DNA of 64,000 nucleotides from the IMG/VR virus record IMGVR_UViG_3300027996_002186, positions 124,001 through 188,000 of that record; one strand, written 5' to 3'. Under the pieces are notes generated by a model. That model was given only the letters and a program-made list of their open reading frames with translations. It did not search any database and was not told the origin of the DNA. The position numbers were made by a program, and so were the translations under genes. Below are positions 2,668 through 37,414 of the stretch, piece by piece. How positions within the stretch are numbered: position 1 is the first letter of the stretch; the number at the start of each line of letters is the position of its first letter.

Positions 2668-3750
2668 TTATACTGAAACTGGTACTTCACTAAATATCGT
2701 CTCTAACATTCTTTCAGTAACTTGGTATGGGTCACAATTAGAAGCTGGTCTTCTATCTTCAAAATACCCTTTCTTATCAACAATTGATTGTGCTGGTATT
2801 CTAATACTTGTGTCTCTCGTACTGTAACCGTGTGTAAATTCGTGTATAGTTGAAGTTTCATGTTCTCCTGTCATTCTCTTATCATTCTCTAATCCATATA
2901 CTGCCATGTGCTCTTTGTGAGTTTCTTTTAATTTCATAACAGCTTCATCTATTAAAGATAATCCACCTTCTTCTCTCATTTCCTTTGTTGAGAAGTTAAC
3001 GTGACACCCTGATCCATTCCAATCACCAGTCATTGGCTTTGGGTGTAATGATACAATAACATTGTATTTTTCAGCTACCCTTTCTAATAAGTATCTAGAT
3101 ACCCACATTTGGTCACATCCATTTAGTGGTTTCACTGGTCCAATTTGATATTCCCATTGGCCTAACATAACTTCCGCATTTACTCCTGAGATGTCTAAAT
3201 CAATTTCTATACACATATTCATATGATCTTCAACTATACCTCTACCAACAACACTATCAGATCCTATACCACAATAATAATCTCCTTGTTGTCTTGGTTC
3301 ACCTTTTTCGAATCCTAATGGTAGTGCTCCATTCGTTCCAAATGGATTTCTATCTTTCTTCGTTAAAGTGTATTCTTGTTCCCATCCAAACCAAGGTAAT
3401 TCATCCTTTTCGATTGTTTCGTCTATACCTAGTTCTTCGATTTTTTCTTGTAGTTTGTTTCTGTGATTACTTTCGTGTTGTGTACCATCTGGGTTTAATA
3501 CCTCACAAAAAACTAATTTGTTTTGGTCACCTCTAAATGGGTCCTTAGTTATGAAAACTGGATTTAGTAAACAATCTGTATTCTTCCCCTTTCCCGCTTC
3601 TGCTTGTTTTGTTGAACTTCCATCAAATGACCACATTGAGTAGTCTTCCACTTTTAAGGAATCCTTTGTTTTAATTACTTTTGTTTTACTTCTTAGTTGT
3701 TGTGGATTTGACCCATCCAACCATATATACTCTAATTTAATATTTTGCAT
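2668..3750 (-). CDS. glnA: Glutamine synthetase type II (GSII)
   Basis: LEYIWLDG, WSFDGSST, EQEY, QWEYQIGP, HPKP, WNGSGCH, GYFEDRRP, DPY; about 360 aa, typical of GSII. Confidence 0.95.
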   Translation of the reverse strand: MQNIKLEYIWLDGSNPQQLRSKTKVIKTKDSLKVEDYSMWSFDGSSTKQAEAGKGKNTDCLLNPVFITKDPFRGDQNKLVFCEVLNPDGTQHESNHRNKLQEKIEELGIDETIEKDELPWFGWEQEYTLTKKDRNPFGTNGALPLGFEKGEPRQQGDYYCGIGSDSVVGRGIVEDHMNMCIEIDLDISGVNAEVMLGQWEYQIGPVKPLNGCDQMWVSRYLLERVAEKYNVIVSLHPKPMTGDWNGSGCHVNFSTKEMREEGGLSLIDEAVMKLKETHKEHMAVYGLENDKRMTGEHETSTIHEFTHGYSTRDTSIRIPAQSIVDKKGYFEDRRPASNCDPYQVTERMLETIFSEVPVSV

Positions 3751-7079: not shown

Positions 7080-8777
7080 ATGCCATCATATAATAACTTT
7101 AACGGAGCAGCAGGAGCAGATTCTAACTTCGCTGCTAGTAATTCAGCAGTTGAGAATAAAGGACTATTTAGTCGTATTCTAAGAAACCTTTCAAATTATG
7201 GTATGAACTATGATGATATGATCATCAGAAATCAAGTTGGTATCGGTATAAATGAGGATCCATATTCAGCTAGAGGTAATTCGATGTATGATTTCTTTAG
7301 TCAGAGAGCTGTGGCTTCTGTTTTGAATAGAAAGTCAATACCTTATCTAGATAAAGCATATGGTGATAAGAGAAGAATACTTAGAGAGTATTCTATTAAG
7401 GATGAAATAAGAGATTTTGTGAGTACTATATCGGATGAGTCTATTGTTTTTAATGATGATGTTGCCTTTTGCTCACCTAAATCACTATCAAATGAATATC
7501 CACAAGAAGTAAGAGATAAGTATCAAGAATATTTCGAAAAAATATACAATAAGTATGGATTTTCTGATGGTATTAGTGCTTGGGATATGATGAGAGATTT
7601 CCTTATTGATGGTTATATAGCTATTGAGATTATATATGATGATAAGAAAAAGAATATTGTTGGTTTCAATAGAATGAGACCAGAAACTTTAGTACCTGCT
7701 TATGAACCAGCTATTGGACACTTATGGATACAATTTCCAGAGGATCCACAATTAAGGAGAATATTTTTAGATTCACAAATAGTTTATATATCATATTCAA
7801 CACAGAATGATTATTCAGAAACTTCTTATGTTGAAGGTTTGATAAAACCATATAATCAATTAAAAATATTAGAACAAACTAGAATAATGTTCAATGTTAT
7901 AAACGCTACTCTTTATCAAAAATTTACAATTCCTATTAAAGGATTGTCTAGACAAAGAGCAGAAGAACAAATAGGTCAGTTAATACATGATTATTCAGAA
8001 GAAGTTGAGTGGGATGATAGTCTAGGAACACTTACTATCAATGGTGCTAAGCACTTACCTTACAATAAACAAATATGGTTTCCTGAGGGAGATGCTGGTA
8101 CTCCTAATATGGAGATGGTTTCACCAGAAGGTCATGATTTGAATGATGAAACTATGTTATCTTGGTTTTATAAGTCTCTTAAAAGAGCTTCTAAGATACC
8201 TATATCTAGATTCGAAGGTGAAAATGGTGGTGGTAACCTTTTTGGTGACGCTTCTGAGATGACTAGAGATGAGATTAAATTTCACAATTTTATTAGTAGA
8301 TTAAGAGCTAACTTTAAAGAACTTATTGTTAAGCCACTTAAATTACAAATGTTAATTGAGTTTCCTGAATTAACAGAGGATGAGGTATTTACTAATAGAG
8401 TTGATATTGACTTCTATACTAATCAAATATTTGAAGATTGGAAGAAGATAAATAACTTAGCTAAGAAATCAGAAATAGTTGGAACTTTATTAGGTGTTAT
8501 GAGAACAGATGAAAAACCTTATTTTCACATTGAGTGGATAATGGATAATATATTCAAGCTTACTCCAGAGGAGAAAGCTGAGAATGACAGGTATTGGGCT
8601 CGTGATGCTGGTGAAGGTGTTGGTTCTGGTGAAGAAGGCGCTGAAGGCGGAGATGATGGAGGCGACTTTGGTGAATCTGGTGATGTTGGTGGTGTAGATG
8701 ATGCTGGTGGTGGAGATGATGGTGGAGATGCTGGTGGAGATGCTGGTGGAGATGACGGTGGAGAATTTGAATTCTAA
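7080..8777 (+). CDS. gp20: Portal vertex protein (T4 gp20-like)
   Basis: FLIDG.IAIE, LIKPYNQLKILE, WFPEG, KSLKRASKIPISRF, TRDEIKFHNFI.RLR.NF; Gly/Asp-rich tail. Confidence 0.92.
   Translation: MPSYNNFNGAAGADSNFAASNSAVENKGLFSRILRNLSNYGMNYDDMIIRNQVGIGINEDPYSARGNSMYDFFSQRAVASVLNRKSIPYLDKAYGDKRRILREYSIKDEIRDFVSTISDESIVFNDDVAFCSPKSLSNEYPQEVRDKYQEYFEKIYNKYGFSDGISAWDMMRDFLIDGYIAIEIIYDDKKKNIVGFNRMRPETLVPAYEPAIGHLWIQFPEDPQLRRIFLDSQIVYISYSTQNDYSETSYVEGLIKPYNQLKILEQTRIMFNVINATLYQKFTIPIKGLSRQRAEEQIGQLIHDYSEEVEWDDSLGTLTINGAKHLPYNKQIWFPEGDAGTPNMEMVSPEGHDLNDETMLSWFYKSLKRASKIPISRFEGENGGGNLFGDASEMTRDEIKFHNFISRLRANFKELIVKPLKLQMLIEFPELTEDEVFTNRVDIDFYTNQIFEDWKKINNLAKKSEIVGTLLGVMRTDEKPYFHIEWIMDNIFKLTPEEKAENDRYWARDAGEGVGSGEEGAEGGDDGGDFGESGDVGGVDDAGGGDDGGDAGGDAGGDDGGEFEF
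8610..8774 (+). repeat. Low-complexity coding repeat (GGDA/GGDD units) at the portal C-terminus
   Basis: ggtggagatgct-type 12-mers. Confidence 0.8.
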
Positions 8778-8826: not shown

Positions 8827-9280
8827 ATGCCGCAGTTTTTGGGTCGGGTATATCAAAGTAAAATTGTGTTACGCTATTACAACTTGGAAGTTTCATTTGT
8901 TTAACTTCTAGTAAACACCCCGATTCTAATATGTTTTTTAATTCTTTACCTTTTGGTGTATCTAGAACTTTTAATACTATTTTTAACTCATCCACTTTAT
9001 TATTCGTTATGATAAAAGACATTGACCTAACAAAAAATGATATACTTTTTAATAATATATCAGAATATTCTGGTTTTCCTAAACTACCATATACCGGACT
9101 ATTTATTTTTGATATTTCGGTTACGTCAAATCCAATCCTTTTACCTTCGTTTAATAAAACATTAAGTTTTATCTCACGTTTATATTGTATCCATTGTGGA
9201 AATTTAGTTAGTAATCGATCATAGTTATTTAACTCAACATCATTTCCTAAAACAACATTATATTCTAGTAAATCATCCAT
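8825..9280 (-). CDS. Catalytically dead paralog of the gp21-type prohead protease
   Basis: VYGSLGKPE vs own protease VYGEFDHPD; KVLDTPKGKELKNILESGC vs KLLSTYWGKEAKALVDDGC; the VSSR motif is absent. Confidence 0.55.
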   Translation of the reverse strand: MDDLLEYNVVLGNDVELNNYDRLLTKFPQWIQYKREIKLNVLLNEGKRIGFDVTEISKINSPVYGSLGKPEYSDILLKSISFFVRSMSFIITNNKVDELKIVLKVLDTPKGKELKNILESGCLLEVKQMKLPSCNSVTQFYFDIPDPKTAA

Positions 9281-11184
9281 TACATTTTTATGAAATCTAT
9301 TTGTTTCTTTTCTAAATCAACACCATTAACTATGATAGTTATCTCATCACCTAATCTGATTCTATCCCCAACATCATTAAAGATTTGATAGTTTTGTGTG
9401 TCTATATTATAATTACCTTCTAAAGATTGGTATCTTATCATACCCTCACATTTACTTTCTGTTAATTCAACATATAATCCCCAATCAGTTACACCAGAAA
9501 CTATCCCAGTGAATACTTTCCCAATTTTATCTAAAAGATATTCGGCTTGTTTGTATTTTATAGAATCTCTTTGGGCTCTGGATGCTATCAATTCTCTACT
9601 TGAACACCATTTAGCCTCATCTTCAACTTTAGTAGGGTTTCCTTGTTTCTTATTATGTAAGAAATCAAGTAACATTCTATGTGTCATTAAATCCGGATAC
9701 CTACGTATTGGACTTGTGAAGTGTGAATAGTGTGTGAATCCTAATCCATAATGTCCTATGTTTTGTATTGTGTATGTTGCTTTAGACATACATCTAGTTA
9801 CAACCGTACTTAACATATTTTCTTCTGGTGTTCCTTTAACATCTTGTAATAACTTGTTTATAGATTTTTTAAGATCTTCAGATTCGCCTTCTATTTTGAA
9901 TTCGTGACCAAAAGTCTTACACACATTTGATAATGCTGTTAACTTCTCCATATTAGGAGTATCATGTACTCTAAATACATTAGTTCTCGAATTACTTGAT
10001 AATAGTTTAGCAACAGATTTATTAGCTAGTAACATAAATTCTTCAATTAATTTATTAGCTTCTTTCTGTTCTTTGAAATAAACACCAATTGGTTTCTTAT
10101 TATCCTCTGCTAATTCGAATCGAACTTCCACACCACCCATCTCTAATGAACCGTCTTTAATTCTTTTCTTTCTTATTTTCTTAGCTAATGTGTTTAGATG
10201 ATTAATCATCAATGGATAAACACTACCATCACCTGTGTATTTTTCATCATTACCCTCGATTATCTCTTGAGCATCCTCATAAGCAAATCTCATATCAGAA
10301 TGTATGACTGTTTTACCGTGCCATTCTTTAACAATTTTACCATCCGAGTCTAGTGTAAATACAACTGAAAATGCTAACCTATCTTCATTAGGTTTTAATG
10401 AACATATTCCATTACTAAGTCTTTCTGGTAACATAGATACACATCTATCAACTAGATACACAGATGTTGCTCTTTCATAAGCTTCATCATCTAATTTAGT
10501 ACCAGGTTTAACATAGTGTCCAACATCAGCAATATGTACTCCTACTTCAAATCTATTATCATTCATTACTTTAAGTGATAATGCGTCATCAAAATCACGA
10601 GCATCTACTGGGTCGATTGTTATTGTTGTTGTATCTCTCATATCTCTACGAGATTTTATTTCCTTTTCGGTTATTACTTCTGGTGTGAGTTCTGATTCGT
10701 TTATAACATCTTGTGGAAAATCAACTGGTAATCCATATTCATACATTATCGAATTCATCTCAGCGTTATTATCACCAACATCTCCTAATATCTTAGTTAT
10801 CTTAGCTTGTGGGGATTTACTATCTACCCACTTTGTGAGTTCGACTATAACCTTTTGGTTATCTTCCGATTTTAATCCACCCTTGATATAGAAATCAACT
10901 GGTATTCTTTTATTATCTGCTATAACAAATGTTGATTTACCATTAATATGTACCTTACCAACGAATTCTTTCTTATTCCTTGATATTGTGTTAATTACTT
11001 TAGCTTCTAATTTCCTATCACCCCTAAATACTTCTACAATTACTTTATCTAAGTGTAAAGCATTTTTAGTATTCTTCTTATAAATGAAAATTGATTTATC
11101 GTTTATTGTGATTGTTGCGTGTCTGTTTGTTGAGAACTCTATTTGACCTTCGTAACGTTCTCCTTCTTTTATATTATTATTCAT
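9280..11184 (-). CDS. rnr: Ribonuclease R (RNB family, S1 C-terminus; N-terminal HTH absent)
   Basis: TIDPVDARDFDDALS, ATSVYLVDR..MLPE.LSN..CSL, LIEEFMLLAN, HFTSPIRRYPD. Frame is open to 11244; likely start MNNNIK at 11184. Confidence 0.95.
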   Translation of the reverse strand: MNNNIKEGERYEGQIEFSTNRHATITINDKSIFIYKKNTKNALHLDKVIVEVFRGDRKLEAKVINTISRNKKEFVGKVHINGKSTFVIADNKRIPVDFYIKGGLKSEDNQKVIVELTKWVDSKSPQAKITKILGDVGDNNAEMNSIMYEYGLPVDFPQDVINESELTPEVITEKEIKSRRDMRDTTTITIDPVDARDFDDALSLKVMNDNRFEVGVHIADVGHYVKPGTKLDDEAYERATSVYLVDRCVSMLPERLSNGICSLKPNEDRLAFSVVFTLDSDGKIVKEWHGKTVIHSDMRFAYEDAQEIIEGNDEKYTGDGSVYPLMINHLNTLAKKIRKKRIKDGSLEMGGVEVRFELAEDNKKPIGVYFKEQKEANKLIEEFMLLANKSVAKLLSSNSRTNVFRVHDTPNMEKLTALSNVCKTFGHEFKIEGESEDLKKSINKLLQDVKGTPEENMLSTVVTRCMSKATYTIQNIGHYGLGFTHYSHFTSPIRRYPDLMTHRMLLDFLHNKKQGNPTKVEDEAKWCSSRELIASRAQRDSIKYKQAEYLLDKIGKVFTGIVSGVTDWGLYVELTESKCEGMIRYQSLEGNYNIDTQNYQIFNDVGDRIRLGDEITIIVNGVDLEKKQIDFIKM

Positions 11185-11194
11185 ATTCCTTTTA

Positions 11195-11596
11195 TTAGGA
11201 AATATCGTTTTGTTTATTATCGCGTTTGGATATGTTGTCAACACCGTACTTATCTATAAGTGTTTTTTTCATTTTTTTCAATATTTTATTGTTTTGTATT
11301 GGATAGTCAACACCGTAATTTTCTCTTAATGATTTTTTCCTTTTTGATTCTGAGCATTTTCTACAAGAGTATTCACCCCAGTTATTATCATATTTAATAT
11401 AGTTCTTGAATATTACATCCTTTTCGATTCCACATTTATCACACTTACACTTTATTTTATAGTGGGATCCTTTGGATAGTAATTCAACTGGTATTATTAA
11501 TAATTCACCAATTGTAACATCACTATATCCTAGATTTTCATAGTATGAATAGTTTGCTTCGCTTATTTTAACTTTTATCTCTCTAGTTATTATCAT
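11195..11596 (-). CDS. Zn-binding protein with YGVD repeats typical of phage homing-endonuclease N-termini, no nuclease domain
   Basis: CKCDKC, CRKC, ENYGVDYP, DKYGVDNIS. Confidence 0.5.
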   Translation of the reverse strand: MIITREIKVKISEANYSYYENLGYSDVTIGELLIIPVELLSKGSHYKIKCKCDKCGIEKDVIFKNYIKYDNNWGEYSCRKCSESKRKKSLRENYGVDYPIQNNKILKKMKKTLIDKYGVDNISKRDNKQNDIS

Positions 11597-11765: not shown

Positions 11766-13907
11766 ATGAAACCGGTTTTAATAGTAGAAAATTCACAAAA
11801 CCAACTTATTAGAGAGAGTAACTCTGCTAATAAGGGGTACACATTAGGTGGTACATTCACCGAATTCGGTGTCAAGAACAGAAATGAACGTATTTATTCG
11901 GCTGATAAATTTTTACCAGCATTGAATGAAATGAATGAACGTATAAGTGGCTTAGGTGCTGTTTATGGTGAATTCGATCATCCAGACGTTTTTGACACAT
12001 CACTCTCAAGAGCCTCGCATATTATCACAAAGGCAAGTTATATCCAAGAGAAAAATATCGTAGCGGGAGAGATTAAATTACTAAGTACTTACTGGGGTAA
12101 GGAAGCAAAAGCACTTGTCGATGACGGGTGTCCTGTATTCGTTTCTTCAAGAGCTGCTGGTATTACTGAATCTGATGGTTCAGTTTCCCTTAAAAAATTA
12201 TTTACTTATGACATTGTTGCTGACCCAGGATTTGCGTCAGCTAAAATGGATGTTAAGGTACTTAATGAGTCATTGGGATATAATGACGAAAAATCTAACT
12301 TTAGGATATATGAAATGTCCGATGAGTCAAAAATAAATGAGTTATTCAATATGAACAAAAATGAGTTTGTAACAAAAAAACAATTGACTGACTACTCTAA
12401 CTACTTAGTTAACGAATTAGCATCAACTAAGAAGACAGTTAATACAGCCATTACTAAAGGTAATGTAGCTCCAAAGAAATTGGAACAATTATTAGAGTAT
12501 TATGAAGAGTTAAACAACTCTAATTCAAAAGTAGCTAAGTATCTTGATTATTTATCAGAAAAGGTACAAATAGTAGTTAATGAGAATAAATCATTAAAGA
12601 AGACAACTGAGAAATTAGTTAAACATAATGATTATTTAGCAGAAAACTTAGAGAAATCTATTAATTACGCTGAGTATTTAGGTGAAAACTTAGATAAGAA
12701 CATTGATTATTCTGAGTATTTAGCTGAGAATTTAGACAAGAACATATCTTATGCTGAGTATTTAGCTGAGAATGTTGATAAAAACATTTCATATTCTGAG
12801 TATTTAGCTGAGAGTTTAGATAAGAACATTGCTTATTCTGAATATATCGCTGAGAATTTAGACAAAAACATCGCTTATTCTGAGTATATCGCTGAGAATT
12901 TAGACAAAAACATTGCTTACTCTGAGTATATCGCAGAAAACGTTGATAATAATATCGCTTATTCTGAATACTTATCTGAGCATGTTGAAGGTAACATTGC
13001 TTACTCTGAGTATATCGCAGAACATTTAGATGATAACATCGCTTATTCTGAGTATGTAGCAGAGAATCTTGACAAATCAATTAATTATCAAGGATTGATA
13101 GTTGAGAGATTAAACGGAGATAAATTATTTGAATCTGTTGAAGGATCTGAAAGCTTCCCATCTCTAGACGATGCTGGTTTTGAAGCTTTTGATGATGAAG
13201 AAAACAAAGATGAAGAAAATTGTAATCTTGAAGTATCATTAGATAATAATGATGAAGAAAATGGTGTTGAAGAATCTGTTGAGAATACAGATGATTACGC
13301 AACAGAAGAAAACAAAGATGAAGAAAATAAAGATGAAGAAAACAAAGAAGATAAAACTGAAAGCCATGATATGGTAAACGGTGATAGTGATTCTGAATTA
13401 TCTGAATCTATTGATAAACTAATTGAAGAAGCTAAAAAACGAAAAGTTTCTGAAACAACAGATGTGAATTTCTTGAAGTTCATGTCTAAATCACAAGTTG
13501 ACAGCTTTTACGCTTTGTCAAATGACGAACAAGAGTCAGTTAAAGTCCATATAAACGAAAGAGACTACTTTACTCAAAAAGATGTTTTGTTATTGATATC
13601 TGAAGCACTATCAACTAAGAACGAATCTCTTGAAGAGAGAATAATCAGATTGATGCCTGAAAACACAAAGCCAATCTGGGAACAATTAAACGACACTTCT
13701 AAGAAATCTATCTTGTCACAAGCTAGATTATATCCAGAAGACGTTTTAACTACTGAGGCACAAGTTGAACATTTTTGGTCAACTAGAAAGCTAAAGACAA
13801 ATGAGTCTGTAACAAAGAAACTTGTATCACATGAAAGCCTTATCCAAGAAGATAAACTTTCAGATAATGATGTTCAAGCGATAATGGAAAGATTCAAAAA
13901 TATTTAA
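11766..13907 (+). CDS. gp21: Prohead core protease (gp21-like) fused to scaffold protein (gp22-like)
   Basis: GVKNRNERIY, YGEFDHP, VSSRAAG, TYDIVADPGF, then coiled-coil 14-aa repeats and an acidic region; directly upstream of the MCP. Confidence 0.88.
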   Translation: MKPVLIVENSQNQLIRESNSANKGYTLGGTFTEFGVKNRNERIYSADKFLPALNEMNERISGLGAVYGEFDHPDVFDTSLSRASHIITKASYIQEKNIVAGEIKLLSTYWGKEAKALVDDGCPVFVSSRAAGITESDGSVSLKKLFTYDIVADPGFASAKMDVKVLNESLGYNDEKSNFRIYEMSDESKINELFNMNKNEFVTKKQLTDYSNYLVNELASTKKTVNTAITKGNVAPKKLEQLLEYYEELNNSNSKVAKYLDYLSEKVQIVVNENKSLKKTTEKLVKHNDYLAENLEKSINYAEYLGENLDKNIDYSEYLAENLDKNISYAEYLAENVDKNISYSEYLAESLDKNIAYSEYIAENLDKNIAYSEYIAENLDKNIAYSEYIAENVDNNIAYSEYLSEHVEGNIAYSEYIAEHLDDNIAYSEYVAENLDKSINYQGLIVERLNGDKLFESVEGSESFPSLDDAGFEAFDDEENKDEENCNLEVSLDNNDEENGVEESVENTDDYATEENKDEENKDEENKEDKTESHDMVNGDSDSELSESIDKLIEEAKKRKVSETTDVNFLKFMSKSQVDSFYALSNDEQESVKVHINERDYFTQKDVLLLISEALSTKNESLEERIIRLMPENTKPIWEQLNDTSKKSILSQARLYPEDVLTTEAQVEHFWSTRKLKTNESVTKKLVSHESLIQEDKLSDNDVQAIMERFKNI
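12627..13088 (+). repeat. 11 tandem 42-nt coding repeats (SEYIAENLDKNIAY consensus)
   Basis: 462 nt = 11 x 42, in frame, synonymous variation, no spacers. Confidence 0.92.
13305..13349 (+). repeat. 3 x 15-nt coding repeat (EENKD)
   Basis: gaagaaaa(c/t)aaagat units. Confidence 0.8.
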
Positions 13908-13992: not shown

Positions 13993-15723
13993 ATGTCACA
14001 CATTAGAATAGACAAACAAAAAGCTATGAAGAAATGGTCTCCAGTATTAGAGAACATGGGAGTTGCTGGTGAAGATAGATTGGATTGGATGTCAGAATAT
14101 GCTGAATTTCACTCAATCAATGAAAACGCTTACGCAAACGCTTCAAACGTATCGGGTATGGGAGCTGTAGTAGCTGCACAACCTAATTCATTAGCTGGTA
14201 ACACAATTGGCAATTACGCTGACTCAACTGGTTCAGGTGATGTTGGTCAAAACCTTTTACCGGTAGCGATGAAAATAGCAGCTCAAACAATCGGTTTAGA
14301 TTTAGTAGCTGTTAAACCTTCTCCAGGTCCAAAAATTGATTTATTATATATCGACTTTAGATATGATGATGCTCATTTAGGAGATTCAGACGAAAGACCA
14401 CAAGTCTTTAAGATTGCACCAAACGCTACATTTTTAACTACTGGTGCTGGTGGTATGACAGCAGTTATCGCTGGATTAAGAGCTCAATTAGCTACGAATA
14501 CAATCACTGAAACAGTTGGTGGTTTAACTGGTAGAATGTGGAATGATATCACAGATGGTTCAGATGTAGTTGTAGAACCAACACCTTCAAAAGAAGGAAA
14601 AGTTGAATTTTTAGGATTCTCTAGAATTGATGGTTATCCAATGTTCAGAGCTTACAGACAGATGAATACATCTCACACAGATGTTGGTTCAGCTCAAGCA
14701 AACTGGGGATTTGACCCGACTAGAAACACATTTAGTCCTACAATGTCAATGGCTTCTCAAATTACTGATTTAGGAGATGTTACTTTAACTGATGAGCCTA
14801 CTATTGAATTAGTATCAGCTCTTGAAGATCACATTCCTGGTTTCTCTGCAAACTGGATGTCGGATGCTACTGGCCCTGCTGGTAACTATCCAATGGATAG
14901 AGAAATGGACGATAAAAGATACTCTGGTATCATCGGACCAAAAATTAGTTCTAAAACAGTTGCCGTAGGTACTATTGAAGTATCTTCAGCTCTTAGAAGA
15001 ACTGAAATTGAAGATATCAAAGCTAACACTGGTATGGATATCGTTCAAAAAATGGAGTCAATTCTTGTTAATGAATTATCTCAAACAATCTCTAAGCAAA
15101 TTGTTGCTAAGATATTTGAAATGGGTTCACTTAACAGATTATCTGCACCAGCTTATGTTGGAACAGCACCGGCACCATTAGCGGGACAAACAATCTTTGA
15201 CTTAAACACAGCTTATGCAACTGTTGCTGCTGGTAATGGAAACGTTGGTGGTGAAACTACACACGCTGTTCAAAGAAAGCTTGTAACTAAGATAGCTCAC
15301 GCTTCTAACTACATCGCTACAGAGGGACGTGTTGGTCCAGCTCAATACCTTATTACAAATGGGGGATTAGCAGCAGCACTTTCTGATATCTCTGGTTATA
15401 CAATTAACCCAGTGAAATCAAAAATCAATGGTCAAGGTCAATTATACCCAGTAGGTTCAATTGGAGATATTTCAATATATGTTGATCCATATATGAGATA
15501 TAACGACAATAGAATTGCTCTTGGTAGAAAGAACAATCCAGATCAACCAGGTATTATTTTTGTACCTTACTTAATGGCTCAGTCTATATCTGTAATTTCT
15601 GAAGCGACTTTCGCTCCTAGAATGTTACTAAGATCTAGATACGCTGTAACAGAAGTTGGTTGGTTCCCACAAAAACAATTTATGACTATCGAAGTTACAG
15701 ATGTGAATACACTTCTTAACTAA
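13993..15723 (+). CDS. gp23: Major capsid protein (T4 gp23-like)
   Basis: KKWSPVLE, IAAQTIGLDLVAVKP, ILVNELSQTISKQIV, IYVDPY, FVPY, TFAPRMLLRSRYA; follows protease/scaffold. Confidence 0.92.
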   Translation: MSHIRIDKQKAMKKWSPVLENMGVAGEDRLDWMSEYAEFHSINENAYANASNVSGMGAVVAAQPNSLAGNTIGNYADSTGSGDVGQNLLPVAMKIAAQTIGLDLVAVKPSPGPKIDLLYIDFRYDDAHLGDSDERPQVFKIAPNATFLTTGAGGMTAVIAGLRAQLATNTITETVGGLTGRMWNDITDGSDVVVEPTPSKEGKVEFLGFSRIDGYPMFRAYRQMNTSHTDVGSAQANWGFDPTRNTFSPTMSMASQITDLGDVTLTDEPTIELVSALEDHIPGFSANWMSDATGPAGNYPMDREMDDKRYSGIIGPKISSKTVAVGTIEVSSALRRTEIEDIKANTGMDIVQKMESILVNELSQTISKQIVAKIFEMGSLNRLSAPAYVGTAPAPLAGQTIFDLNTAYATVAAGNGNVGGETTHAVQRKLVTKIAHASNYIATEGRVGPAQYLITNGGLAAALSDISGYTINPVKSKINGQGQLYPVGSIGDISIYVDPYMRYNDNRIALGRKNNPDQPGIIFVPYLMAQSISVISEATFAPRMLLRSRYAVTEVGWFPQKQFMTIEVTDVNTLLN

Positions 15724-15743: not shown

Positions 15744-15772
15744 GAAAAAAGACTCCTTGTGGGTCTTTTTTC
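15744..15772 (+). terminator. Intrinsic terminator after the MCP
   Basis: gaaaaaagac/gtcttttttc stem. Confidence 0.8.
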
Positions 15773-15797: not shown

Positions 15798-16187
15798 ATG
15801 ATTAAAAAGTATAATTATTTCTTTGAGTCTAAGAAGACTAAGTTCCCTAATATTAAGAAAGTTGAAGTAGAAGGATTCTTTATTCATATAGGTAGAGACT
15901 CCAAATCTAACGACCACTTAACATTTAACGTTGCTGATGATAAAGACATCTGGATGCACGCTAAGGGTGTTCCTGGGAGTCATGTTATTATAAGAGTTAG
16001 AGAAAACTTACCAACTCAAGAAATACTAAGATATGTTGCTGAATTAGCTAAAAAGAATAGTAAAGCTAGTAAAGAAGATAATGTAACTGTTGTTTATTGC
16101 CAAAGAAAATTTGTTAAGAAAGAAAGTGGTATGAATGAGGGTCAAGTAAGAGTTGATTATATCAATGCCTACGAAATCGTAGTTTGA
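15798..16187 (+). CDS. NFACT-R (DUF814-type) RNA-binding domain protein with CTS-like N-terminus
   Basis: IGRDSKSNDHLTF...DIWMHAKGVPGSHVII...VVYCQRKFVKK...GQV; N-terminus MIKKYNYFFES. Confidence 0.85.
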   Translation: MIKKYNYFFESKKTKFPNIKKVEVEGFFIHIGRDSKSNDHLTFNVADDKDIWMHAKGVPGSHVIIRVRENLPTQEILRYVAELAKKNSKASKEDNVTVVYCQRKFVKKESGMNEGQVRVDYINAYEIVV

Positions 16188-16224: not shown

Positions 16225-17580
16225 ATGGCAGGAGAAACTAAAAGAGTAAAATTTTCGGATAAATTACTAAAGATACTTAAAAGTATGGAGGATAATAATA
16301 GTTATCTAGCTTTTGAACTTCTTTGGATGAATGATCCAACTGCAAAATATCATAATGGCCTTAATATAACAAATGTTGATTGTGGTACAGATAAATCATC
16401 AGATTTTAATTTCACTGTTGTTATTGGTGGTAAGAAAAATATAATGAAAATTGGTAAATTCATTAGATATTACTTTTCTAATCTATTTAGTAGTGATGAG
16501 ATAACAAAATTTGCTCATGCTTTCAATAGAGTGAAGAATGGTGGTAAGGCTGAACAATCTGGTAAAAAAGTTGAAATACCTGAGTTTAGTTATAATCCAA
16601 AAGACCCTAGGTCTACATTCTTATCACTTGTTACAGAAACATACCCACACCCACATGAGGAGAAAGTTATGAAATACTTACCAAAAGACTTAGATAAAGA
16701 TGAATTTGGTAATTATTATAAAGTGATTCCTGGTGATGATACTACAATGTTTAGTTCTCACCTTGATACGGCTGATAGAAGTCCAGTTCCTACTAACCTA
16801 TTCACTAAAGAGGTAGATGGGGATGAGATAATCTATACTGATGGTAGTACAATATTAGGGGCTGATGATAAGTCTGGAGTTACTGTTATGATGTATATGA
16901 TGGTTCATAATATCCCAGGTATTTATTATTTCTTTATTGGTGAAGAAAGAGGTGGTATTGGTTCTAATCAATTAGCTGATGTTTATGATAAATTTGATTT
17001 CCTAAAAAATGTTAAGAAATGTATTTCTTTTGATAGAAGAAGAACAATTTCTGTTATAACACATCAAATGGGTGGTCGTTGTTGTTCTGATGCTTTTGGT
17101 ACAGGACTTTGTAAAGAGTACAATAAACAAGGACTTAACCTTTCATTGGATAATGGTGGCGTTTATACTGATTCTGCTTCATTTATGGATATTATTCCTG
17201 AGTGTACTAATTTATCTGTTGGTTATTTAAATGAACACACAGGTAGAGAAGAACAAAACATGACATTTTTAATACAGTTGTGTAAAACTTCTATTAATGT
17301 TGATTGGGCTGGATTACCAGTTGCTAGAAAAGTAGGTTTGAACCTTGATTTAGTGCAGAAGCACAAATCTTTAATTGATGTTATAAAAAATGCAGTATTT
17401 GAATTAGAGGTGAAGATGGTTGGGTTTGAGGATAAAATATATATAAGAATAGATTTAGATGATACTAATCTAGTAACTGTTTATGATACTTTGAATATTG
17501 TACAAAACTTACTTGATAAACATAAAGTAGATAGTATGTGTATTTTTACTGAAACATATCTTAAAATAGAATTAACATAA
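16225..17580 (+). CDS. M28/M20-family Zn peptidase-like protein with N-terminal extension (paralog 1)
   Basis: SHLDT, LGADDKSG, GEERGG, SFDRR, YTDSA, NLSVGYLNEH. Confidence 0.8.
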   Translation: MAGETKRVKFSDKLLKILKSMEDNNSYLAFELLWMNDPTAKYHNGLNITNVDCGTDKSSDFNFTVVIGGKKNIMKIGKFIRYYFSNLFSSDEITKFAHAFNRVKNGGKAEQSGKKVEIPEFSYNPKDPRSTFLSLVTETYPHPHEEKVMKYLPKDLDKDEFGNYYKVIPGDDTTMFSSHLDTADRSPVPTNLFTKEVDGDEIIYTDGSTILGADDKSGVTVMMYMMVHNIPGIYYFFIGEERGGIGSNQLADVYDKFDFLKNVKKCISFDRRRTISVITHQMGGRCCSDAFGTGLCKEYNKQGLNLSLDNGGVYTDSASFMDIIPECTNLSVGYLNEHTGREEQNMTFLIQLCKTSINVDWAGLPVARKVGLNLDLVQKHKSLIDVIKNAVFELEVKMVGFEDKIYIRIDLDDTNLVTVYDTLNIVQNLLDKHKVDSMCIFTETYLKIELT

Positions 17581-18526: not shown

Positions 18527-18529
18527 GAG

Positions 18530-18591
18530 CCGATTGAATACTTTCAATTGGATTTTTTAACCTCACTTCCTACATGGGAGTGAGGTTTTTT
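18530..18591 (+). terminator. Two tandem hairpins/terminators after tmRNA
   Basis: ccgattgaa/ttcaattgg and aacctcacttcc/gggagtgaggtt, each followed by a T-run. Confidence 0.8.
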
Positions 18592-18655: not shown

Positions 18656-19132
18656 ATGATTAATAAATTCGAAGGTCGCTGGAGATTTCTATCAAACTTC
18701 TATCCGTGTGTGGTAGAACACCAAGGTATATCATATCCATCAAATGAACATTATTATGTTGCTATGAAAGTGACGGATGAACAATTTATTAATGGTAGAT
18801 ATTATACCGCTGGTGATTTCAGAGAAATGATAGCGACAATACCAAGTGCTGCTATTGCTAAAAAGTTAGGACAGAAAATAAAGGTTCGTAAAGATTGGGA
18901 AGTTAAGAAGATTGAATTTATGAACTGGGGTGTTAGAGAAAAATTTAATAACAACTCAACTCTTCGAGAATTATTATTATCAACTGGTGACGATGAACTA
19001 ATCGAGGGTAATTTTCATAAAGATACTTTTTGGGGAGTTTGTAATGGAAAGGGTAAAAACCATCTTGGTAAAATTCTTATGGAAGTAAGAAGAGAGTTGA
19101 GAGGTGAGAAGAGAGTTGGTCTGTTTATTTGA
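18656..19132 (+). CDS. NADAR (YbiA-like) ADP-ribosylhydrolase family protein
   Basis: FLSNFYP, YPSNEHYYVAMK, AKKLG, W..KK..FM..GVREKF, LLSTG..ELIEG...DTFWG, GKNHLGKILMEVR. Confidence 0.9.
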   Translation: MINKFEGRWRFLSNFYPCVVEHQGISYPSNEHYYVAMKVTDEQFINGRYYTAGDFREMIATIPSAAIAKKLGQKIKVRKDWEVKKIEFMNWGVREKFNNNSTLRELLLSTGDDELIEGNFHKDTFWGVCNGKGKNHLGKILMEVRRELRGEKRVGLFI

Positions 19133-19226: not shown

Positions 19227-20198
19227 ATGTCTGTTATTAGCTATTTTGGTGGCAAGTCCTCAAAGGTCTTCCATCAGTTCATCAACACAAGAATACCAAA
19301 AGATGGTATCAAAACTTATGTAGAACCATTCTCAGGTGCAATGGGAACGTATATGGATGACCCAAATCTTAAATTCGATACAGTTGTTTATAATGATAAG
19401 AACCGCCACCAGGTGAACTTATATAAGTGTTGTCAAAATCCAACAGAAATGTTGATACATATAGATAATCTAAAGAGTGGTTTATTACACACAACAGAAA
19501 CGGATCCAATAAAAAATTGGGATTTTTATAAAGCTATTTATAAGACATTTCAAAAGAATGATTTCTTAGATGATATGGATTTTGAGATTGGGGATTATGA
19601 AAAAGCTGCTATGTATGCTTTCTTAATTACATCAGCTCATAATTCAGTTTATCCAAGAGGAGCAGGGTTTAATGGTTATAAGAAGAATAATGGCAAACTT
19701 AAAATAGAAGCACTTGTTAATAAACTAAAGAAGGGTAAGTACACAGAGAAATTGGAATCAATTACTGAGTTCTATAATATTGATTTTGAGGAATTGATAA
19801 ACAAATATGATTCAGTAGATACATTTCTTTACTTAGACCCACCTTACGCTAGATTTGACGAGGCTAAAGGAATGGATGATGCTAGGAGACTATTCTGGTA
19901 TGGATGTGATGATGAAGGTGTCTTTGGACCCGAATCACATAGAAGGTTATTAGAAATGCTTAAAAAGACTGATTGTAGATGGTCATTATCTTATTATTAC
20001 TTTCCTTTATTAGAAGAATTATTACCAAGAGACCAATATAACTGGGTTGAGAAAGAAGTATTTAGAAGTTCTGCTCATGGTGGTAACAATTCGGATAATA
20101 AAAAGGTACAAGCTAAAGGTGTTGAGATGCTTATTATGAATTATAATCCAGAAACGGGAGAAAAAATCACTAATAAGGATGTCGAATGTGAACTTTAA
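19227..20198 (+). CDS. dam: Dam-like (D12 class) DNA adenine methyltransferase
   Basis: YFGGKS, YVEPFSGA, YND, FLYLDPPY, EMLIMNY. Confidence 0.88.
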   Translation: MSVISYFGGKSSKVFHQFINTRIPKDGIKTYVEPFSGAMGTYMDDPNLKFDTVVYNDKNRHQVNLYKCCQNPTEMLIHIDNLKSGLLHTTETDPIKNWDFYKAIYKTFQKNDFLDDMDFEIGDYEKAAMYAFLITSAHNSVYPRGAGFNGYKKNNGKLKIEALVNKLKKGKYTEKLESITEFYNIDFEELINKYDSVDTFLYLDPPYARFDEAKGMDDARRLFWYGCDDEGVFGPESHRRLLEMLKKTDCRWSLSYYYFPLLEELLPRDQYNWVEKEVFRSSAHGGNNSDNKKVQAKGVEMLIMNYNPETGEKITNKDVECEL

Positions 20199-20931
20199 GA
20201 TTGTTGATATTTTCGAGAGTGTTAAGGATGATATTTTTTCAATTCAACCATATTTATCTATTAATAATAATCTAAAAAATTTCACTACTAATACATTTAG
20301 TTTATCAATTCCGATGGAATTGGATGGGTTTGGTGTTGATACTGATGCTGAGATGATAAGTCTTATTAGGATTGAGATGAATCAAAGTATTTATAAAACA
20401 ATTTTGAAAGAATTATTCAATACTTCAAAATTTGATTATATAGATATTTCTAAAACTGTTAATACTCACCAATCTGTTAATGATATTATTGATTTTTTAT
20501 CTATTGATTGTATAGATAAAAAATATAAGTATTTAGTTACGAATACTTCTATGGCTAATTCAATAGGTGATAGTTCATTATTTAACTTTAAACCAAGTGC
20601 ATCGGTTGTAGAATCTCAAGGTTTACCATATTTATTTGGGTCTTTGATTAAATATGATGTTTATATAGATCCTTTTATGAAATTTGATGATAATAGAATT
20701 TGCTTATTTGATTCTTGTGAGATTAATATAGAGAATATAAATCAAACTGTTACATCAGCGGCCACATTTGCACCTAAGATGATGATAAGTTATGATGTGG
20801 CTTTTAAAATAGCAGACTCTAAGGTTATATTTGTTTTAGATGGTAATGAATCAAGTAGTTCTTATAAGCAATATAAACAATTACAGCGTGATATAAAAAT
20901 AAATTCTTTATTAGATGGCTCAACAGATTAA
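20179..20931 (+). CDS. Truncated, diverged paralog of the major capsid protein (250 aa)
   Basis: YLVTN, QGLPYLFGSL.....YIDPFMKFDDNRICL and SAATFAPKMM align with MCP YLITN, QGQLYPVGSI.....YVDPYMRYNDNRIAL and SEATFAPRML. Confidence 0.8.
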   Translation: MSNVNFKIVDIFESVKDDIFSIQPYLSINNNLKNFTTNTFSLSIPMELDGFGVDTDAEMISLIRIEMNQSIYKTILKELFNTSKFDYIDISKTVNTHQSVNDIIDFLSIDCIDKKYKYLVTNTSMANSIGDSSLFNFKPSASVVESQGLPYLFGSLIKYDVYIDPFMKFDDNRICLFDSCEINIENINQTVTSAATFAPKMMISYDVAFKIADSKVIFVLDGNESSSSYKQYKQLQRDIKINSLLDGSTD

Positions 20932-21136
20932 TAATACATTCCAGGTGAATTCGGCTTCTAATAAAAATGCTATTGTGGTTGATCCAGATGGATACACAAC
21001 TATTGATAAATTAATACTTGTTGATCAAAAAGATGGAACTAAGTGGGATTTTTCAATTTATGATGGTGAGGTATTAGTTGAGCCACATGGTAAATCAGAA
21101 AAAAGAGAATATAGAATCAATAAGGTTATTTCTTAA
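20915..21136 (+). CDS. Small hypothetical protein with C-terminal REYRINKVI motif
   Basis: ORF coupled to the MCP paralog. Confidence 0.65.
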   Translation: MAQQINNTFQVNSASNKNAIVVDPDGYTTIDKLILVDQKDGTKWDFSIYDGEVLVEPHGKSEKREYRINKVIS

Positions 21137-35894: not shown

Positions 35895-37223
35895 ATGAGC
35901 AAGTTAGTAACATTAAACGGGTTAAATGATGAAGAAATATTAAATGATATATTCATCGATGAGATAATTGTCCTTGAAGATATACAGGGAAGTAAAATAT
36001 GGGTTAATTGGGATGGTAAGCATTTTAATATCAAACCTAAATCTATATCAAATGAGTCAATAAATCTAATTGACTTAGCAATGCAAAATTATTATAATCC
36101 GGCTATCAATTATTTAAATTCATTAGATGATAGAACAAAAAGCCTTTTAAATAAAAAATGGTGGTTTTGTTTCGAGTATTTTCCTGATGAGCAACCTGCT
36201 AATATAGAGTATAATAGAGTTCCTAAGAATAATCTTGTTCTTACAGCTATTTCTAAGTCTAGAAAATATGAATTTACTATTGAAGAGTTAGATGAGTATT
36301 CTAGATTATTTAATGTTGATGTGGTGCCGGTTATATATCAAGGTACTTTGACCGAAAGTATGAAAGAAGCGATAAAGTATTTTATTAATACTAGTGAGGA
36401 TGATTTAGAGTATATTTTTGGTGAAAAGTCATTTGCATTCTTCTTTTATGGAATATTAAACCCATCAGTTAATAACTCTTTCTTAATGGATAATGAATTC
36501 CAAAATAATGTTGAGAAACTTATTATTAAGAGTAAAACAAAGGATATTTCATTTCAGTTATTAAATCCTTTATATAAAAGGTTGAGTGATGATAATCATA
36601 CAGACTTTGTTGAGATTTATACATTAATATTAATTAATTTCTTGAATTTTTCTCAATCTATTAATTTAGAAGATATTAAATTGAAAGGTGATAGAAAAGA
36701 TGAAGTTTACATATATTTAGTTTCTAAAATATTCAATGTTTATATATCGGAGGTCAAACAAGATTTACTTGACTTTGACTTTGTTGTTCCTGAATTCTTT
36801 GATAAGGATAAATTTAAGATAAATATTGAATTGATTAGTAATAAATTAACAAAGGATTATATAAAAGAGAGTGATAAATTAGAATATATTTTTAAGGTTA
36901 TTCTTGGATCTTTCAACAAGAAAAGAAAGAAACCAATTGGTATATTCACTGAGAATACAGTTAAGTTATTTAATAAATTTGTAGTTGATATCGATGATTA
37001 TATCGATACTTATTTAGGAAAACTACATGAAATTGAATTAGGTAGATCTGGTCTACTAGATTTCGGTGACTTCTTTGATATTCAATATGATACTGATGGA
37101 GAGGGTGAAGTTTATCCAGATGTTTACTCAGAGTTTTCTAAGACTGGTGGTCAGAACAAGAAGAAGAAAAAAGGTAAGGGTGGTAAATTCCCAATTGATC
37201 CAGGTAAAATTCCATTTAAATAA
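35895..37223 (+). CDS. RNA-ligase-like (Rnl2-type nucleotidyltransferase fold) protein lacking the adenylated Lys
   Basis: VLEDIQGS in place of EKxDGS; FCFEYF, VVPVIYQG, VEKLIIK resemble motifs III, IIIa and IV. Confidence 0.45.
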   Translation: MSKLVTLNGLNDEEILNDIFIDEIIVLEDIQGSKIWVNWDGKHFNIKPKSISNESINLIDLAMQNYYNPAINYLNSLDDRTKSLLNKKWWFCFEYFPDEQPANIEYNRVPKNNLVLTAISKSRKYEFTIEELDEYSRLFNVDVVPVIYQGTLTESMKEAIKYFINTSEDDLEYIFGEKSFAFFFYGILNPSVNNSFLMDNEFQNNVEKLIIKSKTKDISFQLLNPLYKRLSDDNHTDFVEIYTLILINFLNFSQSINLEDIKLKGDRKDEVYIYLVSKIFNVYISEVKQDLLDFDFVVPEFFDKDKFKINIELISNKLTKDYIKESDKLEYIFKVILGSFNKKRKKPIGIFTENTVKLFNKFVVDIDDYIDTYLGKLHEIELGRSGLLDFGDFFDIQYDTDGEGEVYPDVYSEFSKTGGQNKKKKKGKGGKFPIDPGKIPFK

Positions 37224-37414
37224 TGATTGATATTAAAATGACCTCTGTCGAGGTAAAGGCCGAAGTACGCGAACTAAAATGTAAATATACTCGTGAAATG
37301 GCTAAGGATATACACTATTATAGTGGTTTAGATCCTTTTAGTATGGATAATAGAAGAACAACAAGAAAAGATTCGATTAATAATATTTTTAATATAACAA
37401 AACATGATAAATAA
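37223..37414 (+). CDS. 63-aa mini-protein consisting of a gp23-like capsid segment plus the R..SINNIF motif
   Basis: VEVKAEVRELKCKYTREMAKDIHYYSGLD resembles T4 gp23 VIEAKSRQLKAAYSIELAQDLRAVHGMD; overlaps both neighbours. Confidence 0.65.
   Translation: MIDIKMTSVEVKAEVRELKCKYTREMAKDIHYYSGLDPFSMDNRRTTRKDSINNIFNITKHDK

What the first reader, a model, noticed from the sequence alone, without database searches (positions are those of the whole stretch)
20179..20931. Truncated paralog of this phage's own major capsid protein, outside the head module
Seen: three collinear blocks align with the 13993 MCP: GVDTDAEMISLIRIEMNQSIYKTIL vs GMDIVQKMESILVNELSQTISKQIV; YLVTN...QGLPYLFGSLIKYDVYIDPFMKFDDNRI vs YLITN...QGQLYPVGSIGDISIYVDPYMRYNDNRI; SAATFAPKMM vs SEATFAPRML. 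The N-arm and E-loop/insertion regions are missing (250 vs 576 aa). It overlaps the end of dam and ends in the RDIKINSLL motif. Inference: too reduced for a normal gp24 vertex protein and in a non-structural operon, so probably a repurposed A/P-domain core.
Basis: partly seen in the sequence, partly recalled or inferred. Interest (0 to 1): 0.7.

Follow-up and report, generated by a model that had tools for sequence, protein, structure and literature searches.

The report
Pruned, dispensable capsid-protein paralog in megaphage
A marine giant phage carries a small, complete copy of the core fold of its own major capsid protein; the copy is optional, evolves fast, sits in a counter-defence-type operon, and ends in a short peptide tag shared by dozens of unrelated small phage proteins, so it looks like an accessory capsid-protein mimic and not a standard head part.

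Summary
ORF 20179..20931 (250 aa) is homologous to the window's gp23-type major capsid protein (MCP, 13993..15723): BLASTP E 3e-15, profile comparison 99.2%. It is not a fresh truncation. It belongs to a phage-only family (192 clusters, nearly all 225-265 aa). A confident AlphaFold model (pLDDT 86.7) is a compact but complete HK97 fold that lacks only the MCP's N-terminal extension, long E-loop and insertion domain.

It is not core head machinery.
- Two strong terminators separate it from the MCP, and it lies in a NADAR-Dam-X-p73 unit.
- It is absent from 7 of 28 related phages, scattered over the MCP tree, and from a 95%-complete relative.
- Public metagenomes hold an in-frame 627-nt deletion allele of this same phage.
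- Its median pairwise identity is 27%, against 89% for the homologous MCP core, although dN/dS is 0.2-0.4.

It ends in the tag R-D-x-K-I-N-x-I-L. That tag closes 27 ORFs in this 483-kb genome and 68 in LR745206, against fewer than 1 expected.

Best reading (about 0.4): an accessory MCP mimic or modulator used in conflict. Main rival (about 0.3): an optional gp24-like vertex subunit. Function is untested.

The parts
20179..20931 (+). Gene for the 250-aa compact HK97-fold paralog of the MCP ('short' family)
   Evidence: ORF. BLASTP vs MCP E 3e-15. hhalign 99.2%. 192 homologous clusters of ~240 aa. AF2 pLDDT 86.7, pTM 0.83. Best structural matches are T4 gp23 Z 13.2 and gp24 Z 12.4/11.9.
20197..20307 (+). 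N-terminal helix (res 7-18) and short beta-hairpin (res 26-43). These replace the MCP's first ~343 residues (propeptide/N-arm, E-loop, insertion domain).
   Evidence: DSSP of the model. Model residues 3-229 superpose on a 561-aa Gp23-type model. Alignments to HK97 gp5 and encapsulins start at model residues 1-10.
20317..20799 (+). Region with sequence homology to MCP residues 344-552: spine helix (res 55-80, nt 20341-20418), A domain, long P-domain strands
   Evidence: hhalign A2 vs MCP; BLASTP.
20668..20700 (+). DPFMKFDDNRI block. It is the best-conserved stretch of the family and is shared with the MCP (DPYMRYNDNRI).
   Evidence: Alignments A1/A3: D164 nearly invariant, consensus VDPYMxxxDxRIxLF. 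MCP columns 481-560 are 97-98% conserved.
20857..20916 (+). Extra C-terminal helix (res 227-246) beyond the HK97 fold. It carries the tag RDIKINSLL (20887-20913).
   Evidence: Model. HK97-fold alignments end at ~222. R237 is invariant and I241 nearly invariant in 94 sequences. The tag is shared genome-wide.
20254..20880 (+). Natural in-frame 627-nt deletion allele. It removes residues 26-234 and leaves a 41-aa ORF made of the first 25 residues plus the tag.
   Evidence: Contigs in runs X15 and X16 join 20253 to 20881. The X16 record is 302 nt with 0-1 mismatches at depth 5.08. Frame and product were checked.
18656..19132 (+). First gene of the operon: NADAR-domain protein
   Evidence: Pfam NADAR 5.1e-28. 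Phage NADARs act as counter-defence against DarTG1 (PMC11825919).
19227..20198 (+). Second gene: D12-class N6-adenine DNA methyltransferase (Dam). Its end overlaps the short gene's start.
   Evidence: Pfam MethyltransfD12 3.4e-16, PHROG DNA methyltransferase 1.2e-30.
20915..21136 (+). Last gene: p73, a small all-beta protein that ends in the same tag (KREYRINKVIS). Its start overlaps the short gene's end.
   Evidence: ORF. Motif. It is present with or without the short gene in relatives. AF2 pLDDT 73.5, no fold match.
13993..15723 (+). Parent gene: gp23-type major capsid protein, 576 aa
   Evidence: Pfam Gp23 2.7e-26, phrog_138 major head protein 1.9e-24. RNA contigs cover its 3' end.
15744..15772 (+). 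Intrinsic terminator just after the MCP stop (12-bp stem plus T run)
   Evidence: Metatranscriptome contigs over the MCP end at 15707.
18559..18587 (+). Second strong terminator, after the tmRNA-like gene. The NADAR-Dam-short-p73 unit starts behind it.

Best explanation
The ORF is an intact gene for a pruned but complete HK97-fold protein derived from this marine megaphage's own gp23-type capsid protein. It is an optional accessory, not a core head part.

Shown:
- the homology, the fold and the breadth of the family;
- purifying selection;
- operon membership with NADAR and Dam;
- repeated absence in relatives and a natural in-frame deletion allele;
- roughly ten-fold faster amino-acid divergence than the MCP core;
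- a C-terminal helix whose tag (R-D/E-x-K-I/L-N/D-x-I/L-L/F) is shared by dozens of otherwise unrelated small proteins.

Inferred:
- Because it keeps the spine helix and the DPxMxxxDxRI block that the MCP itself keeps invariant, it most likely works by occupying sites made for the MCP.
- Those sites could be on MCP or capsomers, or on whatever recognises the MCP. It would then be an MCP mimic. It could act as a decoy for capsid-sensing host immunity, or as a modulator or dominant-negative of capsid assembly, for instance of co-infecting relatives.
- The tag would tie it to a hub common to the tagged accessory proteins.
For: Homology and fold.

Old, length-constant, phage-only family.

Functional gene: dN/dS 0.17-0.38 in unsaturated pairs.

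Not in the MCP unit: two terminators, one unit with NADAR and Dam, start/stop overlaps. Phage NADARs are an established counter-defence (PMC11825919).

Dispensable:
- Family HMM finds no copy within 10 kb on either side in 7 distinct loci where Dam abuts p73 or other small ORFs.
- None anywhere in the 385-kb, 95%-complete G005.
- 6 state changes on the MCP tree, at least 3 forced by supported branches, which is no better than shuffled labels.
- In-frame deletion of residues 26-234 in a near-identical background in two runs.

Hypervariable: median identity 27% vs 89% for MCP 344-552 in the same 20 phages.

Tag class:
- 27 of 782 ORF tails in G004 (0.4 expected) and 68 of 1117 in LR745206 (0.9 expected), with none at N-termini.
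- 31 of 34 DNA-level matches lie in frame before a stop.
- 17 of the 20 tagged ORFs that have a LR745206 hit keep the tag there.

Other MCP-fragment mini-ORFs, several of them tagged, exist in the same genome.
Against: No direct evidence of binding or of any conflict phenotype exists.

- The homo-oligomer prediction gave no answer.
- Operon neighbours are only context, and Dam and NADAR are conserved where this gene is not.
- The gene order portal-protease-MCP...paralog and the patchy distribution also match T4 gene 24. Gene 24 is bypassable and is absent from cyanomyoviruses (PMC3012670, PMC2984593).
- No other gp24-like gene exists in the complete relatives, so a vertex role is open.
- The tag's partner is unknown.
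- RNA contigs gave no expression data for the gene.
Confidence: 0.4

Rival explanations
1. Optional gp24-like vertex subunit. Pentamers of the compact HK97 core would fill the eleven non-portal vertices. Phages that lack it would use MCP pentamers, as T4 bypass-24 mutants and cyanomyoviruses are thought to do.
For: - MCP paralog with a complete HK97 fold. T4 gp23 and gp24 are the best structural matches.
- Same strand, downstream of portal-protease-MCP.
- No other MCP-like gene in the complete relatives.
- gp24 is described as a recent, bypassable addition (PMC3012670) and is absent from cyanomyoviruses (PMC2984593).
- Proteins named vertex protein of only 297-317 aa appear among the structural matches.
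- HK97 gp5 and encapsulins of similar size form pentamers (established knowledge).
Against: - Median identity of 27% where the surfaces it would have to fit (the MCP core) are 89% identical.
- Gains or losses among close relatives and a deletion allele within one population.
- No MCP column tracks presence or absence, so there is no bypass-like signature.
- Separated from the MCP by two terminators and co-transcribed with NADAR and Dam.
- Short E-loop and no N-arm extension for inter-capsomer contacts.
- The tag is shared with about 30-70 unrelated small proteins.
Confidence: 0.3
2. Assembly helper. A soluble MCP-like cap or chaperone would bind MCP monomers or capsomers transiently, for example to restrain premature polymerisation of a very large shell, and would not end up in the virion.
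For: It retains the MCP-like spine helix and the DPxMxxxDxRI block. Several other mini-ORFs copy single MCP segments.
Against: A helper needed for a giant capsid should be conserved, yet the gene is repeatedly lost and hypervariable. No precedent was tested here.
Confidence: 0.1
3. Encapsulin-like separate shell. The compact HK97 protein would build a small compartment that loads the tag-bearing proteins as cargo through their C-terminal peptide.
For: Its size and fold match encapsulins (Z about 11). A C-terminal peptide on many small proteins recalls encapsulin cargo-loading peptides (encapsulin biology from established knowledge).
Against: - The shell candidate itself carries the tag.
- Phages without the gene keep tagged proteins such as p73.
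- Sequence kinship is to the phage's own MCP, not to encapsulins.
- The self-association prediction gave no answer.
Confidence: 0.05
4. Decaying duplicate without function.
For: It is frequently lost and evolves fast.
Against: - 192 clusters keep the same length and an open frame.
- dN/dS is 0.17-0.38.
- There are invariant residues (G154, R237) and a confident fold.
Confidence: 0.03

Closest known systems
Bacteriophage T4 gp24 (head vertex protein, paralog of gp23)
   Same: - MCP paralog encoded downstream of the MCP.
- HK97 fold, and among the best structural matches (1yue Z 11.9, 5vf3_a Z 12.4).
- Non-universal among relatives and dispensable in principle (PMC3012670, PMC2984593).
   Different: - 250 vs 427 aa, with no insertion domain and a short E-loop.
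- Not in a head transcription unit.
- About ten times more divergent than the MCP core.
- Carries a C-terminal tag shared with unrelated proteins.
- Virion presence is unknown.
Encapsulin shell proteins and HK97 gp5 (minimal HK97 folds)
   Same: Same compact fold and size. Alignments cover model residues 1-220 (Z 10-11).
   Different: Its sequence relatives are gp23-type MCPs, not encapsulins. There is no Pfam encapsulin match. It is encoded in a phage next to a full-size MCP. Particle formation was not shown.
Shared C-terminal capsid-binding helices of scaffolding-type proteins (staphylococcal phage 80alpha scaffold and SaPI1 CpmB) and encapsulin cargo-loading peptides
   Same: A short C-terminal helix or peptide is reused by different proteins to dock on an HK97-fold shell. 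This offers a working model for the tag. It rests on memory plus PDB 6b0x.
   Different: Here 27-68 unrelated proteins carry the tag. The phage's own protease-scaffold protein does not. No binding partner was identified.
Phage counter-defence accessory genes (e.g. AdfN NADAR of T4-like phages)
   Same: It shares an operon with a NADAR gene. It shows patchy presence, fast divergence and a deletion polymorphism (PMC11825919).
   Different: No defence system, target or activity is known for this protein. To my knowledge an MCP-derived decoy has not been described.

Membership tests
gp23/HK97-fold capsid protein superfamily | Significant sequence relationship to a gp23-type MCP | tested here: met
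   BLASTP E 3e-15 to the window's MCP. Profile vs MCP 99.2%, E 3.5e-19.
gp23/HK97-fold capsid protein superfamily | Pfam Gp23 (PF07068) match above the gathering score | tested here: not met
   15.6 bits against a cut-off of 24.4, E 0.011. The nearest Atlas clusters of ~241 aa carry PF07068 in 85% of members.
gp23/HK97-fold capsid protein superfamily | HK97 fold (spine helix, A domain, P-domain strands, E-loop, N-arm) | tested here: met
   AF2 pLDDT 86.7. All top Foldseek and VIA matches are HK97-fold proteins. TM 0.75 to a 561-aa Gp23 model over residues 3-229. The E-loop is reduced to a short hairpin.
T4 gp24-type vertex protein | Paralog of the phage's MCP | tested here: met
T4 gp24-type vertex protein | gp23/gp24 architecture with insertion domain, about 400 aa | tested here: not met
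   250 aa. The MCP's first ~343 residues are replaced by 46.
T4 gp24-type vertex protein | Forms pentamers at the eleven non-portal vertices and is present in virions | not testable with these tools
   No cultured member of the clade (PMC9723777). The 4-copy complex prediction returned no answer.
T4 gp24-type vertex protein | Conserved together with the MCP it must fit | tested here: not met
   27% vs 89% median identity. 6 presence/absence changes on the MCP tree. Deletion allele.
Encapsulin system | Shell protein of the encapsulin families in a cellular operon with cargo that bears a C-terminal loading peptide | tested here: not met
   No encapsulin Pfam hit. No relatives in bacterial or archaeal genomes. 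The tag is also on the shell candidate and persists in phages that lack the gene.
Pseudogene / truncated remnant | Broken frame, variable length, neutral evolution | tested here: not met
   Intact frame, family length 225-265 aa, dN/dS 0.17-0.38.

The most novel reading that the evidence does not exclude
This megaphage clade may run two linked, undescribed devices.

(1) A C-terminal address tag (R-D-x-K-I-N-x-I-L) on about 5% of its proteins. The tag would deliver them to one hub, for example into the prohead as ejectable cargo in the way encapsulins load cargo, or to a host or phage hub protein.

(2) A set of proteins cut out of its own capsid protein: the 250-aa core plus 60-170-aa pieces of the N-arm, spine helix and P-domain. 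These would act as mimics, blunting host immunity that senses the capsid protein or poisoning the capsid assembly of competing phages.
Probability: 0.25. Interest if true: 0.85.

Novelty: new variant of a known kind. Interest (0 to 1): 0.62.

Why it matters
MCP paralogs are textbook only as vertex proteins (T4 gp24). This is a large, uncharacterised family of minimal HK97-fold paralogs in the largest known phages. It behaves genetically like an accessory or conflict gene, and it is linked to a proteome-wide C-terminal tag that has no described function.

If it is a vertex protein, it defines the smallest gp23-lineage penton and shows how giant capsids can swap pentons freely. If it is a mimic, it would be a first example of a phage using pieces of its own capsid protein as decoys or assembly poisons.

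Both readings can be tested without culturing the phage: by heterologous co-expression, by tag pull-downs, and by metaproteomics of the marine samples that hold it.

Tried and rejected
- Complex prediction of four copies of the protein: no answer (score 0.00). This is not evidence either way.
- PDB sequence search with the protein and with the MCP: no hits.
- Scan of bacterial and archaeal genomes for family members: none.
- Clamp-binding reading of the tag: no gp45-type (PF09116) or beta-clamp (PF02768) gene in the 483-kb genome. A host clamp was not tested, so the idea was shelved.
- DNA-element reading of the tag (promoter or RBS): rejected. 31 of 34 DNA-level matches lie in frame just before a stop, the information sits at codon positions 1-2, and four different Arg codons are used.
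- Pfam on ten tag bearers: nothing.
- p73 structure: no fold match (best Z 3.7).
- Search for an MCP residue that tracks presence or absence of the gene (a bypass-24-like signature): none.
- Metatranscriptome contigs: no coverage of the gene in four runs where the MCP and the tmRNA-like RNA are covered. Contigs show presence only, so no conclusion on expression.
- ARAGORN and Rfam gathering thresholds on the expressed RNA at 18155-18532: negative.
It was rerun without them.

Full report
**What the window is.** The window lies in a 76.9-kb IMG/VR contig. The same sequence sits at 124,001-188,000 of a 483,262-bp viral contig, G004, rated 98% complete by CheckV. The nearest named relatives are the uncultured megaphages LR745206 (634,780 bp) and LR756502 (642,428 bp). 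These belong to the Mahaphage clade, which is predicted to infect Bacteroidetes (PMC7162821; PMC9723777). Runs that hold the sequence are marine.

The head genes are T4-like:
- portal gp20 (7080..8777, Pfam 2e-56);
- a gp21-like protease fused to a repeat-rich scaffold (11766..13907);
- a 576-aa gp23-type MCP (13993..15723).

**The observation.** ORF 20179..20931 encodes 250 aa. BLASTP against the MCP gives E 3e-15, 30% identity over residues 105-203 vs 439-546. A 96-sequence family profile aligns columns 47-207 to MCP 344-552 at 99.2% probability, E 3.5e-19. The overlap with the end of dam (20 nt) and the terminal RDIKINSLL (20887-20913) are as stated.

**Not a truncation but a family.** A word-indexed search found nine homologues at 58-94% identity, most of them 247-256 aa. 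An exhaustive HMMER search found 192 clusters at E <= 1e-3 (108 at <= 1e-10), almost all 225-265 aa. No relative was found in bacterial or archaeal genomes. ESM-Atlas neighbours are clusters of 'Gp23 domain-containing' proteins of about 241 aa.

**Structure.** AlphaFold2 with 94 sequences gives pLDDT 86.7 and pTM 0.83. The elements, in order, are:
- helix 7-18;
- a short hairpin at 26-43;
- a 26-residue spine helix at 55-80;
- the A-domain helices;
- long P-domain strands at 180-211;
- an extra C-terminal helix at 227-246.

Every strong match is an HK97-fold protein. The best are T4 gp23 (Z 13.2, model 22-222 vs 108-521) and T4 gp24 (Z 12.4 and 11.9). Encapsulins and HK97 gp5 follow at Z 10-11, with alignments that start at model residues 1-10. 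Residues 3-229 superpose on a 561-aa Gp23-type model (TM 0.75, 221 residues, rmsd 3.0). The protein is therefore the complete core of the MCP. What has been stripped is the N-terminal extension, the long E-loop and the insertions. MCP columns 121-280 are the variable ones, and 321-360 and 441-560 are 95-98% conserved.

**Context.** Strong intrinsic terminators follow the MCP stop (15744-15772) and a tmRNA-like gene (18559-18587). None lies between 18656 and 21136. NADAR (18656..19132), Dam (19227..20198), the short gene and p73 (20915..21136) therefore form one unit, with start/stop overlaps at both ends of the short gene. Phage NADARs are a proven counter-defence against DarTG1 (PMC11825919). 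The order portal / RNase R(-) / protease-scaffold / MCP / NFACT-R / p451 / p164 / NADAR / Dam / short / p73 is conserved in about 30 IMG/VR loci and in LR745206 and LR756502.

**Dispensability.**
- In seven distinct related loci, Dam is followed directly by p73 or by other small ORFs. A family HMM finds no copy within 10 kb on either side.
- The junction holds different inserts in different phages: the short gene, a 66-aa ORF, a 110-aa ORF, or nothing.
- The 385-kb, 95%-complete relative G005 has the MCP but no family member anywhere.
- On an MCP tree of 28 loci, presence or absence needs 6 changes, at least 3 of them forced by well-supported branches. Shuffled labels give 6.4 on average.
- In two metagenome runs of one study, contigs identical to the window join 20253 to 20881. 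This deletion is in frame (627 nt, 3-nt microhomology) and removes residues 26-234. It leaves 25 N-terminal residues fused to the tag and keeps p73's start intact. Two other runs of the same study hold the full-length gene.

**Rate.** In 20 phages that carry the gene, median pairwise identity is 27% (minimum 20%). For the homologous MCP segment 344-552 it is 89% (minimum 80%). In unsaturated pairs dN/dS is 0.17-0.38, so the gene is under purifying selection. Dam gives 0.02-0.12. Some pairs have Dam at 94% and the MCP at 81-86% but the short protein at only 39-42%. No MCP column separates phages with the gene from phages without it.

**The tag.** The last helix carries R-D/E-x-K-I/L-N/D/K-x-I/L/V-L/F/I, followed by 0-8 polar residues. 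R237 is invariant in the family.
- In G004 a strict pattern hits the last 16 residues of 27 of 782 ORFs, where 0.4 would be expected. A PSSM finds 44 tails against 15 internal sites.
- In complete LR745206 it hits 68 of 1117 ORF tails (0.9 expected) and no N-termini.
- A DNA matrix finds 34 sites, and 31 of them lie in frame just before a stop. Third codon positions and Arg codons vary, so selection acts on the peptide.
- The bearers are 55-251 aa. They are unrelated to one another, have no Pfam match, and lie on both strands.
- 20 of the 27 tagged G004 ORFs have a hit in LR745206. 17 of those hits keep the tag, and the other three carry near-matches.
- The partner is unknown. No phage clamp gene was found.

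**Other MCP pieces.** The same genome holds small ORFs similar to single MCP segments:
- the N-terminal region: 163 aa (E 2e-13), 84 aa (7e-6), 172 aa (0.002);
- the strand-plus-spine-helix region: 63 aa at window 37223..37414 (Pfam Gp23 E 3.7e-5) and 68 aa (2.5e-4);
- the C-terminal strands: 67 aa (5.6e-6).

Several of these are tagged.

**Interpretation.** The gp24 analogy fits the paralogy, the fold, the gene order, the lack of any other gp24-like gene, and the fact that gp24 itself is bypassable and absent from cyanomyoviruses. It does not fit easily with several other facts:
- the extreme divergence next to an almost invariant MCP core;
- turnover among close relatives and within one population;
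- co-transcription with NADAR and Dam;
- membership in a class of tagged, fast-evolving small proteins.

I therefore rank an accessory MCP-mimic or modulator role first (about 0.4) and an optional vertex subunit second (about 0.3). An assembly helper, an encapsulin-like shell and a decaying duplicate rank lower. The mechanism is inferred, and no binding or phenotype has been shown. The only complex prediction gave no answer, and RNA contigs were uninformative for this gene.

**Novelty.** An MCP paralog is a known kind of thing. A minimal, tagged, dispensable and hypervariable one, in the largest phages, is a new variant. The tag and the MCP-fragment mini-ORFs appear undescribed in the literature I could search.

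Noticed in passing
window 20887-20913, 21104-21130, 37223..37414, 41425..41964, 44908..45186, ~2589-2633; genome-wide in G004 (L089-L113) and LR745206 (L116-L147): A C-terminal peptide tag (K-x-x-L/R-R-D/E-x-K-I/L-N/D/K-x-I/L/V-L/F/I, then 0-8 polar residues) ends 27-44 small ORFs in the 483-kb genome and 68 in LR745206, against fewer than 1 expected. It is selected at protein level and kept in orthologues. The partner is unknown.
   Followed up: partly
window 37223..37414; G004 335553..335759, 198754..198957(-), 234140..234631, 41158..41412, 436351..436869(-), 463514..463735: Small ORFs (63-172 aa) similar to single segments of the MCP: the N-terminal region, the strand plus spine helix, and the C-terminal strands. 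Several carry the tag, and several have orthologues in LR745206.
   Followed up: partly
window ~18147-18540 (+), terminator 18559-18587: An ORF-free, conserved (65-90% identity in about 50 related loci) RNA of about 375 nt. In four marine metatranscriptomes its contig depth is at or above that of the MCP. The consensus fold has a tRNA-like acceptor stem and T-arm, 33 of 62 pairs show compensatory changes, and there is an internal frame ending at a conserved UAA. It is a divergent tmRNA that ARAGORN and the Rfam threshold miss. tmRNAs in huge phages are known (PMC7162821).
   Followed up: yes
window 9280..11244 (-), 15798..16187 (+), 18147-18540: RNase R/II (RNB 1e-110), an NFACT-R RNA-binding protein and the tmRNA-like gene are interleaved with the head genes. 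Together they look like a ribosome-rescue / RNA-decay theme.
   Followed up: no
junction at window 20198/20915; L073, L074, L080, L085, L088: The Dam-p73 junction is an insertion hotspot. Depending on the phage it holds the short MCP paralog, a 66-aa ORF, a 110-aa ORF or nothing. The ORF after p73 in relatives also ends in the tag.
   Followed up: partly
window 16225..17580 and 42000..43082: The 451-aa protein downstream of the MCP has a 360-aa paralog (48% identity). That paralog lies directly after the tagged 179-aa ORF 41425..41964. Neither has a Pfam match.
   Followed up: no
window 11766..13907: The gp21-like protease domain (weak Peptidase_S77 match) is fused to a long scaffold-like region. 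That region has about a dozen tandem copies of a ~13-aa unit (NIAYSEYIAENLDK), followed by an acidic stretch. This was seen in the translation.
   Followed up: no
window 19227..21136 vs L114: Synonymous divergence differs five-fold between adjacent genes in the closest relative (Dam dS 0.42, short 0.08, p73 0.18). This hints at recombination mosaicism around the locus.
   Followed up: no
window 2668..3750 (-), 47954..49492, 59385..60836: Also encoded here: a glutamine-synthetase-like gene, a family-B DNA polymerase that appears split or short (512 aa), and a TROVE (Ro60-like) domain protein.
   Followed up: no
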